DNA of 63,236 nucleotides, filler included, from Reticulomyxa filosa (GCA_000512085.1; 15 parts of 15 records of this genome joined end to end with filler, not necessarily neighbours in it); one strand, 5' to 3'; positions 43,565 through 47,358 are shown, counted from the first letter of the whole stretch. The notes: a model not told the origin generated them from the sequence alone. Numbers and translations: made by a program.

Positions 43565-44566
43565 TTAACTGTTTTTTGCAGTAAAAATAATATCATAAGA
43601 TGTAGTATCTTGACTTTCCACACAATACCATTCACCACTTTTACTTTTGCGAATTTCATCTCGGACATCTTGCAACATTTGTTTAAAAGGATAACCAAAT
43701 TTATATTTGGATATAATAACATCTTTCATACTCTTGCTCAATAAAGATAAATCACAAACTTTAAATCCTTTAGTTGTTGACCAAATAGTCAAAAATTCGT
43801 CATCATTATGTCCATAAATGGATATATTTTTATTTGTATTTTCATTTCCTCTCGTTACAATTTCATGTGATTTTGGAATGTTTTGACCACGACAAGCATC
43901 GATAATAAATATTTTAGGAAAATCTTTCAAAGATTCCATTTCATGACAATTAAATGATGCACGTATTTTATCAATTGATACTAATTTTCCATCACTTGTT
44001 ATGAATACATTTCCATCGTCTCCATGTCCGCAAATAATCATTATTAATCCATCAAAGTTATTTGCATTTCTACGAAGTTTAAAATTAATAATTAATTGAT
44101 CCATAAATTCTTGAACATCTTGTTTTGTCATTTTCGAAGATTCATTACATACAAATTCATAATTTAATTCTTGTTTGAATAATTGTTTAAAATTACTTAT
44201 GTCTTTTTCTTTCACATTTCGAAGATTTTTCAATTTTGTGTCATCATTATACTCACTGATGGCGATCATTACCACTAATGCGTTTGCGATTGTTTTTGTT
44301 TTTCCAGTGGTTAGTAATGGTTGAAAAGAAACCCACATTATTTTGAATGAGGGTTTATTCTTTTCAAATTCTCCTTTTACAGTTGCATCTGATTCAATTA
44401 TATTGTCTTTCATATCCATTATTTGAAGTCTTAAATTTCTATTGTTTATTTTTTGAAAATCTTTCGACGGCAAACAAAAATAAGCTTGACGAAGGAGTTC
44501 TTCAAATGTCAATTCTTTCATTTTTATCAATTTTTTCTCTTGATTTACTATTATATATGCTTCAAA
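43565..44566 (-). CDS. Caspase-fold cysteine protease (peptidase C14) with N-terminal PB1-like segment; predicted last exon of a TPR-caspase fusion gene
   Basis: ANALVVMIAISEY, IMIICGHG (His), SDG..V, PKIFIIDACRG (Cys), FLTIWSTTKG. AG acceptor at 44568-44567 is in frame with ORF 43565..44530. Confidence 0.9.
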   Translation of the reverse strand, partial: FEAYIIVNQEKKLIKMKELTFEELLRQAYFCLPSKDFQKINNRNLRLQIMDMKDNIIESDATVKGEFEKNKPSFKIMWVSFQPLLTTGKTKTIANALVVMIAISEYNDDTKLKNLRNVKEKDISNFKQLFKQELNYEFVCNESSKMTKQDVQEFMDQLIINFKLRRNANNFDGLIMIICGHGDDGNVFITSDGKLVSIDKIRASFNCHEMESLKDFPKIFIIDACRGQNIPKSHEIVTRGNENTNKNISIYGHNDDEFLTIWSTTKGFKVCDLSLLSKSMKDVIISKYKFGYPFKQMLQDVRDEIRKSKSGEWYCVESQDTTSYDIIFTAKNS

Positions 44567-44642
44567 CTATTTTAATTTTTTTAAATTACTATTATCTTAT
44601 AAAAAAAAAAAAAAATAACAACAAAAAAAAAAAAAAGCAAAC

Positions 44643-44678
44643 TTCTTGTTCCTTTTCTTCTTTTTTTTCTTCGTTGTT
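44643..44678 (-). CDS. 36-nt micro-exon (NNEEKKEEKEQE) linking TPR array and caspase
   Basis: Purine-rich 12 codons bounded by CAG and GTTTG; both flanking introns are phase 0. Confidence 0.7.
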
Positions 44679-44745
44679 CTGTTCCAATTAAATAAAAAAA
44701 CATCATACTTATTTTTTTTTTTGTTTATCTTAATAAACAAACAAA

Positions 44746-47358
44746 CTAAACTTGATCAATCTTTTCTAATTTCAATCTTACGTCCTGTGTTTTCTTATTC
44801 TGCTCGCCAAATTTTTCAGTAAAAATCATCATTGTATCTTCATAATACTTTTTTGCTTTGATTATATCTCCTTTTATAAAATAGACATCTCCTAAAAGAA
44901 CATATGATTCACCAATGTGTGGATGATTAGGGTCTAATTTTTCAATTCTCAAGTCTAATGCTTTTTGTCCAAATTCAATTGATTTATCCAATTCATTCTT
45001 ATTCTTATATACACTTGCCAAATAATAGAAAGACATAGCAATGCTAGGATTATCCTCATTCAATTTTTTTGACCTGATTGCTAACGATTGTTCAAAATAT
45101 TCAATCGCTTTGTCATTGTTTCTTTTTTTTTCCGATATTAATCCCAAAATATCATGCGACACTGCAATATCCAACTGAAATTCTCCATTTCTATCATACA
45201 AAATCTCCAAAGCCTTATCAACATATTCTTTGGCTTTGTTTATTTGTCCTTTTCCTTTTATCCATACTAATCCCAATTCATTGTATAACCTTGCAATATC
45301 TACATCATTTTCTTTCAACCTCTTCAATCCAATTTTTAAAGCTTCTTCATGACATTCAATAGATTTTTCATATTCTCCTTTTTCAAAGTATATCCTTCCA
45401 AAACTTTTGAATGTATCTTCATCTAATCCTCCTGACCAAATTTTCATTATTTTTTCTTCATATTCAAATGCTATATCATATTCTCCTTTCAATTCATATA
45501 TACATATCAAACGATTATATAAATTAATAGCAGTAAAGTGATTTTTACCTGGTTTCTCTGTTATCATTTTCAGTGCTTTTTCGAGATATTCAATTCCTCT
45601 GTTATATTCTCCTTTTTTTGTATGAGCAAATCCCAAAATAGCGTATGCAGAAGCGGTATTGAACTCGGCATTAAAATCAATTTCACTTATTTGACTTGGT
45701 GCTATTTTCAAGCTTTTTCTAATGCACTCAATTGCTTTGCTATATTCATCTCCACAATAATAAGCTATTCCCAGCTTGAAACATAATTCAACAACATTAA
45801 TGTGATTTTCACCTAATTTCTCTATTGTTATTATAAGTCCTTTTTCGAAGCATTCAATTGCATTGTTGTATTGTTCTTTATTCATATATGCTTCTCCTGA
45901 CTTATCATATAATTTAGCAAATTCAATGTATTCTTCATTTGAGTGATGTGAGTTTATTTCAAAGCTTTTTTCACAGTATTCAAGCCCCAATTTATGTTGA
46001 TCATTATGACAGTAAGAACATCCCAAGGCAAAATATAACTCAGCAATATCAACATTACCATCACCTAAAGCATTCAATTTTATTTTCAGTTCTTTTTCAA
46101 AATATTTAATGGCTTCGTTATATTCATCTTTTAAAAAATAATATCTTCCCAAATTGTGATATAAAGCAGCAACATCAATGTGATCTTCACCTAATAAATT
46201 TAATTTTATTAGTAGTTCTTTTTTAAAATATTCAATTGCTTTATCAAATTTACATTCCTTAGCGTAAGAAGTTCCCAAATTGTGATATAAAGTAGCAACA
46301 TCAATGTGATCTTCACCTAATTGACCTAATTTTATTCTCAACCCTTTTTCGTAGTATTCAATTGCATTATTGTGTTCTTCTTTGCTAACATAAATATCTC
46401 CGAAAGTATTGTACAAATTAGCAATATCAATATGATTTTCACCCAATTCATTTAATTTTAGTTTTAATTCTTTTTCATAGGATTCAATTGCTTTGTCATA
46501 TTCATCTCTACGATAATAAGCATCTCCCAAATGTTTGTATAAAGTGGCAATATTAATATCATCTTCGCCCAATACAGCTAATTTAATTTTCAATGCTCTA
46601 CAGTAGCATTCAATTTCTTTGCTACTTTCTCCTTTACCATTGTATGCAACTCCTAACCAGTGAAGAGCATCTGCTGCATCTAAGTGCAATATTCCTACTC
46701 TGAGAAAAACTACAAATCGAAAAAACTGAATTGCGGTATCAAACAATGATTGATTAAATAATTCTCTCCCCGTAGTCGTAATATGGTCAACATCGATAGG
46801 CAAATAATTAACATAAGGATTAAATTCATAATTAATAGCTGATTGTGCAGTTTGGACAAGAAAGTGAGTGACATGACACTCTCCAATTCCATTTAGCACG
46901 CAATCAATAACATAAACACATCCATCAATTGTAACATTATCAAATACAATTGTTTCAGAATGAAAGGAATAAACAGTATATGGTAAAATTTCTATTTTAT
47001 CTTTCATGTATTCACTTGAATTTATCATCATTGTGAAAGGAATGTCTTGCTCAAATTGTCCATCATTTGGTTTCTCCAGTTGATCAATATTAGTTGCAAC
47101 TACAATAATTCCTTTTTGTTCATTTGTAATCATTTCCCTGATCAACTCATGAGCTAATTTATTTGCTTCAATCCATTCAGTAAGTTGATCTAGTTCATCA
47201 CATTCATTAGTAGATTGTTTTTGTTCATCATATTCATGAGCAGATTGTTCTTGTTCGTCATATTCATGAGTGGATTGTTCTTGTTCATCATATTCATGAG
47301 TAGATTGTTCTTGTTCATCAGTAGATTGCTCTTGTTCTGTATATTTCGTTTCATCCAT
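44746..47358 (-). CDS. TPR-array protein (~16 42-aa kinesin-light-chain-type TPRs); predicted first exon of a TPR-caspase fusion gene
   Basis: 870-aa intronless ORF with repeats IA.LY..LG..Y....EY.KAIEY.EK.LKIKL..LGE.HID. The last codon and stop (GTT TAG) coincide with a GTTT splice donor at 44751. Confidence 0.93.
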   Translation of the reverse strand: MDETKYTEQEQSTDEQEQSTHEYDEQEQSTHEYDEQEQSAHEYDEQKQSTNECDELDQLTEWIEANKLAHELIREMITNEQKGIIVVATNIDQLEKPNDGQFEQDIPFTMMINSSEYMKDKIEILPYTVYSFHSETIVFDNVTIDGCVYVIDCVLNGIGECHVTHFLVQTAQSAINYEFNPYVNYLPIDVDHITTTGRELFNQSLFDTAIQFFRFVVFLRVGILHLDAADALHWLGVAYNGKGESSKEIECYCRALKIKLAVLGEDDINIATLYKHLGDAYYRRDEYDKAIESYEKELKLKLNELGENHIDIANLYNTFGDIYVSKEEHNNAIEYYEKGLRIKLGQLGEDHIDVATLYHNLGTSYAKECKFDKAIEYFKKELLIKLNLLGEDHIDVAALYHNLGRYYFLKDEYNEAIKYFEKELKIKLNALGDGNVDIAELYFALGCSYCHNDQHKLGLEYCEKSFEINSHHSNEEYIEFAKLYDKSGEAYMNKEQYNNAIECFEKGLIITIEKLGENHINVVELCFKLGIAYYCGDEYSKAIECIRKSLKIAPSQISEIDFNAEFNTASAYAILGFAHTKKGEYNRGIEYLEKALKMITEKPGKNHFTAINLYNRLICIYELKGEYDIAFEYEEKIMKIWSGGLDEDTFKSFGRIYFEKGEYEKSIECHEEALKIGLKRLKENDVDIARLYNELGLVWIKGKGQINKAKEYVDKALEILYDRNGEFQLDIAVSHDILGLISEKKRNNDKAIEYFEQSLAIRSKKLNEDNPSIAMSFYYLASVYKNKNELDKSIEFGQKALDLRIEKLDPNHPHIGESYVLLGDVYFIKGDIIKAKKYYEDTMMIFTEKFGEQNKKTQDVRLKLEKIDQV
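47195..47340 (-). repeat. 30-bp coding tandem repeat (EQEQSTHEYD x ~4-5)
   Basis: Repeated tcatcatattcatgagtagattgttcttgt units. Confidence 0.9.

What the first reader, a model, noticed from the sequence alone, without database searches (positions are those of the whole stretch)
43565..47358. Hidden single-gene TPR-array / PB1-like / caspase fusion: candidate sensor-protease immune or cell-death receptor in a protist
Seen: on the minus strand the TPR frame ends ...KIDQ|GTTTAG. Intron 44751-44679 (73 nt, ends CAG), exon 44678-44643 (NNEEKKEEKEQE), intron 44642-44567 (76 nt, ends TAG), then FEAYIIVNQEKKLIKMKELTFEEL... runs in frame into the caspase. All junctions are phase 0, and the intron sizes and GTTT donors match other introns here. 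Predicted product ~1214 aa: acidic repeats, ~16 TPRs, charged linker, PB1-like domain, caspase with intact His/Cys dyad. Known: repeat arrays coupled to caspase-fold proteases act as activation switches in bacterial TPR-CHAT/caspase systems and separase, and repeat sensors recruit caspases in animal inflammasomes. Inference: ligand binding by the TPRs activates the fused protease, with no NTPase or death fold needed. Caspase-like genes in foraminifera may already be catalogued; the architecture is what looks new.
Basis: partly seen in the sequence, partly recalled or inferred. Interest (0 to 1): 0.92.

Follow-up and report, generated by a model that had tools for sequence, protein, structure and literature searches.

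The report
Annotated TPR-caspase fusion gene in Reticulomyxa

Summary
Observation confirmed. The three minus-strand exons (47358-44752, 44678-44643, 44566-43565) join in phase 0 and give 1214 aa. That product is identical to GenBank RFI_29501 (Reticulomyxa filosa contig ASPP01025606.1), so the gene is already annotated, not hidden.

No RNA run was listed, so splicing rests on comparison:
- Paralog loci keep the GTTT donor at the end of the TPR array.
- The charged micro-exon recurs in paralogs.
- The first two strands of the domain before the caspase lie upstream of any ATG in that exon.

The Asp-binding pocket of true caspases is not kept: DACRG replaces QACRG, and a conserved Arg/Lys-Gly sits in the subunit linker. 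Cleavage after basic residues is therefore likelier (inference).

At least seven R. filosa paralogs combine the same N-domain, TPRs and a caspase, in two domain orders. Others carry Kelch, TRAF zinc-finger or Hsp70 parts.

The sensor-protease idea is plausible but untested. Interest is moderate.

The parts
43565..47358 (-). Whole gene: GenBank RFI_29501, 1214 aa, three exons
   Evidence: The joined exons translate to a product identical to P0187. The annotated gene lies at L006 1893-5686, which is window 47358-43565.
44752..47358 (-). Exon 1 (869 codons): acidic repeats, N-domain and TPR array
   Evidence: 870-aa ORF. tblastn of P0187 residues 1-869 is 100% identical.
47185..47337 (-). Acidic 10-aa repeats (STHEYDEQEQ-like); 30-nt period, about 4.5 copies
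   Evidence: Tandem Repeats Finder: 47185-47320, period 30, 88% matches. Translation.
46744..47187 (-). Conserved N-domain (about aa 58-205): one long helix followed by a beta-rich part. Found so far only in R. filosa TPR-caspase relatives. Fold unassigned.
   Evidence: Twelve R. filosa proteins share it at 40-54% identity, with 24 invariant columns. AF2 mean pLDDT is 81.9. No Pfam family recurs. Foldseek against PDB gave nothing at E<=0.001, and only the TPR tail matched.
44785..46674 (-). TPR array: 15 units of about 42 aa (kinesin-light-chain / NPHP3 type, TPR_12)
   Evidence: Pfam TPR_12 E 8e-88, TPR_10, TPR_NPHP3. The 42-residue register is shown. A 126-nt tandem periodicity is seen.
44679..44751 (-). 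Intron 1: 73 nt, GTTTAG...CAG, phase 0. The stop codon of the TPR ORF lies inside its donor.
   Evidence: A GTTT donor sits at the same codon position in paralog loci L003 and L005.
44643..44678 (-). Micro-exon of 12 codons (NNEEKKEEKEQE), a charged linker
   Evidence: A homologous charged stretch precedes the module in P0194/L004 (SNQDHKQEKKENE, followed by a GTTTTG donor) and in P0007, P0005, P0008 and P0003.
44567..44642 (-). Intron 2: 76 nt, GTTTGC...TAG, phase 0, GC 0.11
43565..44566 (-). Exon 3 (333 codons plus stop): beta-grasp domain and C14 protease
   Evidence: tblastn of P0187 residues 882-1214 is 100% identical. AF2 mean pLDDT is 89.2.
44327..44566 (-). Beta-grasp (PB1-like) domain, exon-3 residues 1-80. 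Its strands 1-2 lie upstream of the first ATG of this exon.
   Evidence: DSSP gives the order beta-beta-alpha-alpha-beta-alpha-beta, with pLDDT 86-98. The best PDB matches are PB1 domains: MEKK3, Bem1, PKCiota/Par6, MAP2K5, p62 and NBR1, at Z 7.2-7.8, rmsd 2.0-2.5 A over 67-71 residues. There is no PB1 hit by sequence.
43568..44302 (-). Peptidase C14 (caspase-fold) domain, exon-3 residues 89-333
   Evidence: Pfam PF00656 at 76.4 bits. VIA Z is 27.8 for caspase-3, 26.8 for caspase-8, 26.5 for caspase-9, 21.5 for MALT1 and 16-18 for metacaspases. Foldseek E is 5e-15 for caspase-8 and caspase-9.
44024..44026 (-). Catalytic His codon (CGHG; exon-3 residue 181)
   Evidence: It aligns with the SHG motif of caspase-3. 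His is kept in 27 of 32 R. filosa paralogs.
43892..43894 (-). Catalytic Cys codon (IDACRG; exon-3 residue 225). The residue two before it is Asp where caspases have Gln.
   Evidence: It aligns with the QACRG motif of caspase-3. Cys is kept in 29 of 32 paralogs. Asp223 is kept in 43 of 45 aligned sequences.

Best explanation
This is one three-exon gene of Reticulomyxa filosa, already annotated as RFI_29501. It encodes a 1214-aa multidomain clan-CD protease.

Domain order: acidic repeats, a family-specific N-domain, 15 kinesin-light-chain-type TPRs, a charged linker, a PB1-like beta-grasp domain, and a C14 domain of the animal-caspase clade with an intact His/Cys dyad.

It belongs to a large R. 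filosa-specific expansion. In that expansion the same 'beta-grasp + caspase' module, encoded by a single exon in the four loci read here, is attached to different protein-interaction scaffolds: N-domain+TPR (in either order), Kelch, a TRAF-type zinc finger, or Hsp70.

Likely mechanism (inferred, not shown):
- The protease is a zymogen that becomes active by caspase-type dimerisation through its last beta-strand.
- It then cleaves itself at the conserved Arg/Lys-Gly in the large/small-subunit linker.
- The TPR/N-domain part, and perhaps the beta-grasp domain, control where and when two protease domains meet or which substrates they reach.
- The substrate P1 preference is more likely basic (as in paracaspases and metacaspases) than Asp.
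For: Gene model:
- The joined exons equal P0187/RFI_29501.
- The GTTT donor directly after ...EKI[ND][EQ] is conserved in L003, L005 and the window. Introns are 55-83 nt at GC 0.11-0.20.
- The micro-exon is homologous to linkers in P0194, P0007, P0005, P0008 and P0003.
- Residues FEAYIIVNQEKKLIK, which form strands 1-2 of the beta-grasp (pLDDT 93-98), precede the first ATG of exon 3. They follow a stop that is also the acceptor, and they are conserved in paralogs. The caspase exon therefore cannot stand alone.

Family:
- Seven proteins combine the N-domain, TPRs and PF00656. The remainder are cut by contig ends or have a degenerate caspase.
- Kelch, zf-TRAF and Hsp70 variants exist.

Folds.

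Dimer: ipSAE 0.42 against a best control of 0.00. The runs agree in at least 50% of contacts and partner pLDDT is at least 76. The mark was reached by 21 of 30 solved homodimers and 0 of 23 solved monomers. The interface is symmetric on residues 312-325.

Pocket:
- Asp replaces Gln283 in 43 of 45 sequences.
- The Arg179 position is mostly Pro.
- The 'YSWR' segment of caspase-3 is an insertion relative to the family.
- A second Asp (272) is conserved.
- Arg/Lys-Gly sits in the linker of about 28 of 32 paralogs.
Against: - No transcript evidence: no RNA run was listed, so splicing is inferred only from comparison and from the published gene prediction.
- The dimer pass may reflect the model's memory of solved caspase dimers (caveat).
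- P1 specificity is inferred from alignments at about 17% identity and was not checked residue by residue on a structure. The comparison with the acidic pocket of MALT1 rests on my own recollection of that protein.
- PB1-likeness is at Z values that the tool itself calls common, and there is no sequence support.
- Nothing here shows what the TPRs or the N-domain bind.
Confidence: 0.7

Rival explanations
1. One reading: an NTPase-free immune or cell-death receptor. The TPR array recognises a non-self or danger ligand. Binding releases or clusters the fused protease, which then kills the cell or cleaves an effector.
For: - A lineage-specific expansion with many paralogs, variable scaffolds and copies that have lost catalytic residues: P0195 Cys to Tyr, P0193 His to Tyr. 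This pattern is typical of conflict-related families.
- The TPR_12/TPR_10/NPHP3-type repeats are the type used as sensor arms of STAND proteins. One STAND-TPR structure, 6mfv, is among the TPR matches.
- Four paralogs have the order protease - N-domain - TPR, which mimics the effector - hub - sensor layout.
- Distant fold relatives include TPR-CHAT (7zoq), SAVED-CHAT (8tl0) and separase.
Against: - There is no ligand, expression, infection or death data.
- The repeats within the array are only moderately alike (71% over a 126-nt period). This is unlike the near-identical, hypervariable repeats of fungal NLRs.
- TPR arrays are generic scaffolds.
- The central N-domain has no Walker A motif or NTPase hit, so no known switch is present.
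Confidence: 0.2
2. Two products rather than one. Intron 1 is retained or the transcript ends there, giving an 870-aa TPR-only protein whose stop lies inside the donor GTTTAG. The caspase exon is then silent, is a decaying duplicate, or is expressed on its own from the internal Met (MKELTF...).
For: - The TPR ORF closes two codons after the donor.
- No RNA data are available.
- In the neighbouring-type locus L001, a Kelch-like gene and a caspase gene 90 nt apart are annotated as separate genes.
- The published models are predictions and contain probable read-through introns: P0189 'VWLSILFYFQ' and P0194 'VLFFLFLIYCKFQ'.
Against: - Both ORFs are intact over 870 and 333 codons in a genome of about 28% GC.
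- A start at the internal Met would delete strands 1-2 of a confidently folded, conserved domain.
- The ATG inside intron 1 (44706) is in another frame and runs into a stop if the same splice sites are used.
- The same adjacency and donor position recur on three other contigs.
- Skipping the micro-exon would still stay in frame.
Confidence: 0.1
3. A scaffolded housekeeping or regulatory protease, not a death or immune device. The kinesin-light-chain-type TPRs tether the protease to cargo or cytoskeleton, or recruit substrates for limited proteolysis, as with MALT1 or separase.
For: - The TPRs are of kinesin-light-chain type: KLC2 structures are among the matches, and TPR_12 is found.
- The pocket features point to Arg/Lys cleavage, as in paracaspases and metacaspases. 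I recall that many of these have non-death roles.
- Hsp70- and Kelch-linked relatives suggest substrate-recruiting adaptors.
Against: - Dozens of paralogs, several with lost catalytic residues, are not what a housekeeping function predicts.
- No orthologue with this architecture was seen outside R. filosa. The module's beta-grasp part matched only R. filosa proteins among 1.84 billion representatives.
Confidence: 0.2

Closest known systems
GenBank RFI_29501 (R. filosa) and its paralogs RFI_04677, RFI_02778, RFI_00725, RFI_27043, RFI_02048 and RFI_23453
   Same: RFI_29501 is the identical sequence. The paralogs share the N-domain at 40-54% identity, the TPR_12 array and the beta-grasp + C14 module.
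   Different: Some paralogs add an N-terminal second beta-grasp copy or a 'KWW' domain. Others place the protease in front of the N-domain and TPRs. None has been studied experimentally as far as my searches reach.
Animal caspases (MEROPS C14A: caspase-3, -8, -9, CED-3, Dronc)
   Same: - Closest fold: Z 22.7-27.8, TM 0.8 by target.
- Closest sequences in the PDB.
- The His/Cys dyad and the xACRG motif are kept.
- The predicted dimer uses the last strand.
- Klim et al. 2018 place R. filosa C14 proteins with animal caspases (PMC5982838).
   Different: - There is no CARD, DED or death-fold prodomain; a beta-grasp domain takes that position.
- Gln283 is Asp.
- The Arg179 and Arg341 equivalents are not conserved.
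- The linker carries Arg/Lys-Gly and has no conserved Asp.
- The protease is fused directly to a repeat array and is not recruited to one.
Prokaryotic C14 proteases (orthocaspases / bacterial metacaspases) fused to TPR, WD40 or Sel1 repeats
   Same: A caspase-fold protease is fused directly to protein-interaction repeats. WD40, TPR_1, Sel1 and TPR_2 are the commonest partner domains, with TPR_1 in 7.0% of the sequences surveyed (PMC3501461). Basic P1 specificity is probable.
   Different: The protease here belongs to the caspase clade and is structurally closer to caspase-3 (Z 27.8) than to metacaspases (Z 16-18) or a bacterial C14 (3bij, Z 16.5). It is a eukaryotic, intron-containing gene with extra beta-grasp and N-domains.
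PB1 domains (p62, Par6/aPKC, Bem1, MEKK3/MEK5, NBR1)
   Same: The beta-grasp topology is shared. PB1 structures are five of the first ten non-protease matches, at Z 7.2-7.8, rmsd 2.0-2.5 A over 67-71 of about 80 residues. By my reading of the sequence, an acidic stretch D-x-K-D-x-I-I-E-S-D-E sits where PB1 has its OPCA motif.
   Different: No Pfam PB1 hit and no PDB sequence hit, even with a 26-sequence profile at E<=10. By reading, the PB1 lysine on strand 1 is not conserved: the position is E, T, K or Q. Other ubiquitin-like folds score almost as well (PKD ULD 7.4, FERM F1 7.4, ISG15 7.2).
TPR-CHAT (Csx29, type III-E CRISPR), SAVED-CHAT and separase
   Same: These are caspase-fold proteases regulated through an attached helical-repeat or sensor part. 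They are fold relatives: 8tl0 at Z 14.5, separase at 9.0-9.2, 7zoq at 7.2.
   Different: They are far more distant than animal caspases and belong to different families (CHAT, C50). Their regulation is by RNA-guided complexes, cyclic nucleotides or securin, and none of these is indicated here.
NLR/STAND receptors and the apoptosome/inflammasome logic
   Same: A repeat arm plus a caspase output. Some paralogs have the order effector - middle domain - TPR.
   Different: There is no NACHT or NB-ARC, no Walker A motif in any of eight family members, and no death-fold adaptor.

Membership tests
Peptidase family C14 (clan CD caspase fold) | Match to Pfam PF00656 above the gathering score | tested here: met
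   76.4 bits against a cut-off of 21.4, E 3.5e-21, profile positions 4-226 of 233.
Peptidase family C14 (clan CD caspase fold) | Catalytic His-Cys dyad in the conserved motifs | tested here: met
   CGHG and IDACRG align with SHG and QACRG of caspase-3. His181 and Cys225 are present.
Peptidase family C14 (clan CD caspase fold) | Caspase/hemoglobinase alpha/beta fold | tested here: met
   AF2 pLDDT 89.2. Z 27.8, rmsd 2.5 A over 223 residues to caspase-3. Foldseek E 5e-15.
Caspases in the strict sense (C14A, Asp-specific) | Closest relatives are animal caspases rather than paracaspases or metacaspases | tested here: met
   Z 22.5-27.8 for caspases, against 21.5 for MALT1 and 12.6-17.9 for metacaspases. 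The PDB sequence hits are all caspases. This agrees with PMC5982838.
Caspases in the strict sense (C14A, Asp-specific) | Gln of the QACxG pentapeptide (Gln283 in caspase-1 numbering; the numbering is from my own knowledge) | tested here: not met
   The position is Asp here, and Asp in 43 of 45 aligned family members.
Caspases in the strict sense (C14A, Asp-specific) | The two S1 arginines (Arg179 and Arg341) | tested here: inconclusive
   The Arg179 position is Arg in this copy but Pro, Lys, Glu or Ser in the paralogs. The caspase-3 'YSWR' segment that holds the second Arg aligns as an insertion absent from the family. The alignment is at about 17% identity and was not checked on superposed structures.
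Caspases in the strict sense (C14A, Asp-specific) | Cleavage after Asp | not testable with these tools
   This needs an enzyme assay. The conserved Arg/Lys-Gly and the lack of a conserved Asp in the subunit linker argue for basic P1.
PB1 domain | Beta-grasp fold superposable on PB1 structures | tested here: met
   Z 7.2-7.8, rmsd 2.0-2.5 A, 67-71 residues aligned to 4y5o_B, 1ip9, 1wmh_B, 2o2v_B, 4uf9_A and 2g4s_A. The tool warns that Z under 8 can be a common arrangement.
PB1 domain | Sequence membership (Pfam PF00564 or a match to solved PB1 sequences) | tested here: not met
   No PB1 hit for any of 26 family members at E<=10. A profile of 26 sequences found no PDB sequence at E<=10.
PB1 domain | Type-B lysine on strand 1 and/or the OPCA acidic motif | tested here: inconclusive
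   Judged by reading the alignment. The strand-1 position is E, T, K or Q, so it is not conserved. An acidic D..D.IIESDE stretch is conserved after strand 3. No residue-level structural alignment was available.
TPR proteins of kinesin-light-chain / NPHP3 type (TPR_12) | Repeated TPR_12/TPR_10 matches in a 42-residue register | tested here: met
   TPR_12 at 289 bits in 7 stretches, TPR_10, and TPR_NPHP3 at 138 bits. Fifteen units are seen.
NLR/STAND receptors | Central P-loop NTPase (NACHT or NB-ARC) | tested here: not met
   No NTPase family in Pfam. No Walker A pattern in P0187 or in seven paralogs.
Death-fold-recruited initiator caspases | CARD, DED or other death-fold prodomain | tested here: not met
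   No such Pfam hit. The domain in front of the protease folds as a beta-grasp, not as a six-helix bundle.

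The most novel reading that the evidence does not exclude
Reticulomyxa filosa may run an NTPase-free and death-fold-free surveillance system. 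In it, caspase-clade proteases with an acidic (Arg/Lys-directed) pocket are wired directly to interchangeable repeat sensors (TPR, Kelch). The connection goes through a PB1-like beta-grasp prodomain, which would take the oligomerising role that CARD and DED play in animals. This would be an independent protist solution to caspase activation.
Probability: 0.15. Interest if true: 0.8.

Novelty: new variant of a known kind. Interest (0 to 1): 0.42.

Why it matters
R. filosa holds the nearest known non-animal relatives of animal caspases (PMC5982838). How such proteases are switched on without CARD or DED adaptors or an apoptosome is open.

This gene and its paralogs offer a concrete, testable set:
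- a beta-grasp prodomain;
- direct fusion to TPR or Kelch scaffolds, in both domain orders;
- a pocket that looks Arg/Lys-directed.

If these features are confirmed, the 'caspase' label used for these proteins in evolutionary studies of apoptosis would need qualification. Repeat-fused activation would then be seen in a eukaryote as well as in bacteria. The sequence itself adds nothing new to the databases.

Tried and rejected
- RNA evidence: the look-up of sequencing runs listed no run.
- PB1 by sequence: nothing from a PDB profile search or from a Pfam scan of 26 members at E<=10.
- N-domain identity: no recurring Pfam family and no ESM-Atlas feature hit. In the three fold searches only the trailing TPR helices matched. 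Its fold is unassigned, not shown to be new.
- A recollected likeness of the N-domain to TBCC/CARP beta-helices got no support and was dropped.
- Module swapping: the window's protease module falls outside the well-supported clade of the other TPR-linked modules. The AU test does not reject one clade (p 0.456), so no shuffling claim is made.
- Extra upstream exons: tblastn with the N-terminal beta-grasp, KWW and Kelch parts of paralogs found nothing on the contig.
- TPR-caspase fusions outside R. filosa: the longer non-R. filosa relatives checked carry astacin or kinase domains or nothing recognisable, with no TPR.
- The 270-aa downstream ORF has no Pfam hit and no Atlas hit.
- The R. filosa genome paper is not in the searchable library.
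- Joined exons: they were translated only inside one local script, for a string comparison with the stored protein P0187. Searches used the exons by reference or the database's own record P0187.

Full report
**What is there.**
The piece 42386-49250 is the whole 6865-bp contig ASPP01025606.1 of the Reticulomyxa filosa assembly GCA_000512085.1.

On the minus strand an 870-aa ORF (47358-44746) is followed by a 333-codon open frame that ends at 43565. Pfam places TPR_12/TPR_10/TPR_NPHP3 repeats in the first (E 8e-88). It places Peptidase_C14 in the second (76.4 bits against a cut-off of 21.4).

- donor GTTTAG at 44751, and a 73-nt intron ending CAG;
- a 36-nt exon encoding NNEEKKEEKEQE;
- a 76-nt intron GTTTGC...TAG;
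- then FEAYIIVNQEKKLIKMKEL....

All three exons are multiples of three, and the introns have GC 0.18 and 0.11.

**Not hidden.**
A search with the N-terminal part of the TPR ORF returned P0187. This is 1214 aa, 100% identical, lies on a 6865-bp contig, and is named 'hypothetical protein RFI_29501 [Reticulomyxa filosa]'. UniRef calls it 'Caspase family p20 domain-containing protein', with TPR and PF00656 domains precomputed.

In one local script I translated the three exons joined and found the product identical to P0187. That was the only use of a joined model; every search used exons by reference or the stored record. The annotated gene spans exactly the finding's coordinates. The 870-aa ORF alone is not in the protein collection.

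**Is the splicing believable without RNA?**
No RNA run was listed, so the support is comparative.

1. In the paralog loci L003 (RFI_04677) and L005 (RFI_02778) a GTTT donor follows the same codon after ...LEKI[ND][EQ]. In L003, as in the window, the ORF would stop one codon into the intron.
2. A charged micro-exon like the window's is present in L004 (SNQDHKQEKKENE, then GTTTTG). The same charged stretch precedes the module in Kelch/KWW-type paralogs, for example P0007 ...NQDSKEEEEFKAYVIID.
3. The 15 residues before the first Met of exon 3 are conserved in paralogs. They form strands 1-2 of a confidently predicted domain (pLDDT 93-98). The frame opens directly at the acceptor TAG. An independent caspase gene would therefore start inside a domain.
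4. The only ATG in the spacer (44706) is in another frame.
5. Skipping the micro-exon would also stay in frame.

I put the single-gene model at about 0.85.

**Anatomy, refined.**
- Residues 1-55 are acidic, with 4.5 copies of a 10-aa unit.
Twelve R. filosa proteins share it, with 24 invariant columns.
- The AF2 model of that domain (pLDDT 81.9) shows a long helix and then seven or eight strands.
- No Pfam family, Atlas hit or PDB match could be assigned to it. The trailing TPR helices filled every hit list. Its fold is unassigned.
- Residues 229-858 are 15 TPR units in a 42-residue register.
- No Walker A motif occurs in this protein or in seven relatives.

**The C-terminal module.**
The AF2 model of exon 3, built with a 45-sequence alignment, has pLDDT 89.2.

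Residues 1-80 form a beta-grasp.
- After the protease matches, the best PDB matches are PB1 domains: MEKK3 7.8, Bem1 7.6, PKCiota/Par6 7.6, MAP2K5 7.6, p62 7.3 and NBR1 7.2, at rmsd 2.0-2.5 A over 67-71 residues.
- Other ubiquitin-like folds score about the same.
- No sequence method links the domain to PB1.
- A second, divergent copy of the same domain heads several paralogs.

Residues 89-333 are a caspase fold.
- Z is 27.8 for caspase-3, 26.8 for caspase-8, 26.5 for caspase-9, 23.5 for CED-3, 21.5 for MALT1 and 16-18 for metacaspases.
- Foldseek gives E 5e-15.
- His181 and Cys225 are in place.

**A caveat on 'caspase'.**
- Against caspase-3 the family has DACRG where caspases have QACRG. Asp occupies that position in 43 of 45 sequences.
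- The position of the first S1 arginine is Arg in this copy but mostly Pro in paralogs.
- The caspase-3 segment YSWR, which carries the second arginine, aligns as an insertion missing from the family.
- A further Asp (272) is conserved nearby.
- The disordered large/small-subunit linker carries a conserved Arg/Lys-Gly in about 28 of 32 paralogs and has no conserved Asp.

From established knowledge, Arg179, Gln283 and Arg341 bind the P1 Asp in caspases, while acidic pockets give Arg/Lys specificity in paracaspases and metacaspases. I infer that cleavage after basic residues is more likely than after Asp. This is an inference from low-identity alignments, not a result.

**Dimer.**
Two copies of exon 3 were predicted to pair with ipSAE 0.42, against 0.00 for the best of three controls. 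The runs agreed in at least 50% of contacts, and partner pLDDT was at least 76. The mark was reached by 21 of 30 solved homodimers and 0 of 23 solved monomers. The interface is symmetric on the last strand (residues 312-325, with 319 against 319), as in caspase dimers. The tool warns that such a pass may be memory of solved relatives. It shows likeness, not binding.

**The family.**
The exon-3 query found 54 R. filosa proteins in the length-limited search. It found 50 representatives below E 1e-30 in the exhaustive one. Hits outside R. filosa align only from about residue 89 onward, so the beta-grasp part matched only R. filosa proteins.

Architectures seen:
- N-domain-TPR-module (RFI_29501, RFI_04677, RFI_02778, RFI_00725);
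- beta-grasp-caspase-N-domain-TPR (RFI_27043, RFI_02048, RFI_23453, and RFI_03719 with Cys replaced by Tyr);
- Kelch-module;
- zf-TRAF-module;
- Hsp70 followed by the beta-grasp.

The N-terminal 'beta-grasp + caspase' of the second type is homologous to exon 3 as a unit (tblastn E 1e-10 to 2e-15).

In a tree of the module, the window's copy lies outside the supported clade of the other TPR-linked copies. One clade is not rejected (AU p 0.456), so I make no claim of module exchange.

**Literature.**
- R. filosa C14 proteins are catalogued as the sister group of animal caspases (Klim et al. 2018, PMC5982838).
- One of them serves as an outgroup in caspase phylogenies (PMC10959488).
- I found no paper describing their TPR, Kelch or beta-grasp architecture. 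The genome paper itself is not in the library.
- In prokaryotes, TPR, WD40 and Sel1 repeats are the commonest partners of C14 domains (PMC3501461).

**Verdict.**
The gene is therefore known as a sequence but unstudied. The architecture is a eukaryotic, caspase-clade variant of the known 'caspase-fold protease fused to repeats' theme.

The sensor-protease or immune reading remains a reasonable hypothesis without direct support.

Noticed in passing
window 42414-43226 (-): There is an intact 270-aa ORF downstream of the gene. It is not among the genes called on this contig. Its GC is 0.40-0.45 against about 0.28 for the rest of the contig, and it has a hydrophobic stretch near the N-terminus. It has no Pfam hit and no Atlas hit. 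It may be an unannotated gene.
   Followed up: partly
window 48576-49184 (+): A 202-aa ORF lies on the opposite strand and is annotated in GenBank as a 200-aa gene. Only sub-threshold Pfam hints were found (SYF2, COG3_N, E about 0.009).
   Followed up: no
P0195 (RFI_03719) and P0193 (RFI_02048): Two paralogs have lost a catalytic residue. P0195 has KNAYRG (Cys replaced by Tyr) and P0193 has CGYG (His replaced by Tyr). They keep the N-domain and the TPRs. These are possible pseudo-proteases or decoys.
   Followed up: partly
L005 2674-2728 and L004 about 5560-5600: The GenBank models of RFI_02778 and RFI_00725 seem to translate part of the intron before the module: 'VWLSILFYFQ' and 'VLFFLFLIYCKFQ', each starting at a GTTT donor. 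These are likely mis-set splice sites in the published annotation.
   Followed up: partly
L001 2722-5970: A Kelch-like 430-aa gene and the caspase gene RFI_11496 are annotated as separate genes only 90 nt apart. Other paralogs are annotated as Kelch-caspase fusions. Either both forms exist or the annotation is inconsistent.
   Followed up: partly
P0001-P0008, P0029 and P0194 (about 70 aa before the linker): A conserved 'KWWNEREQKDKTEIIEKF..SNEQF..WLLN..KWK' domain precedes the module in many paralogs but is absent from the window's gene. It was not characterised.
   Followed up: no
P0144/P0198 (Nonionella stella, EukProt) and P0183 (ENA metagenome): Distant relatives of the protease domain occur in very long proteins together with an astacin metalloprotease domain (2178 aa, a foraminifer) or a protein kinase domain (2386 aa).
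   Followed up: no
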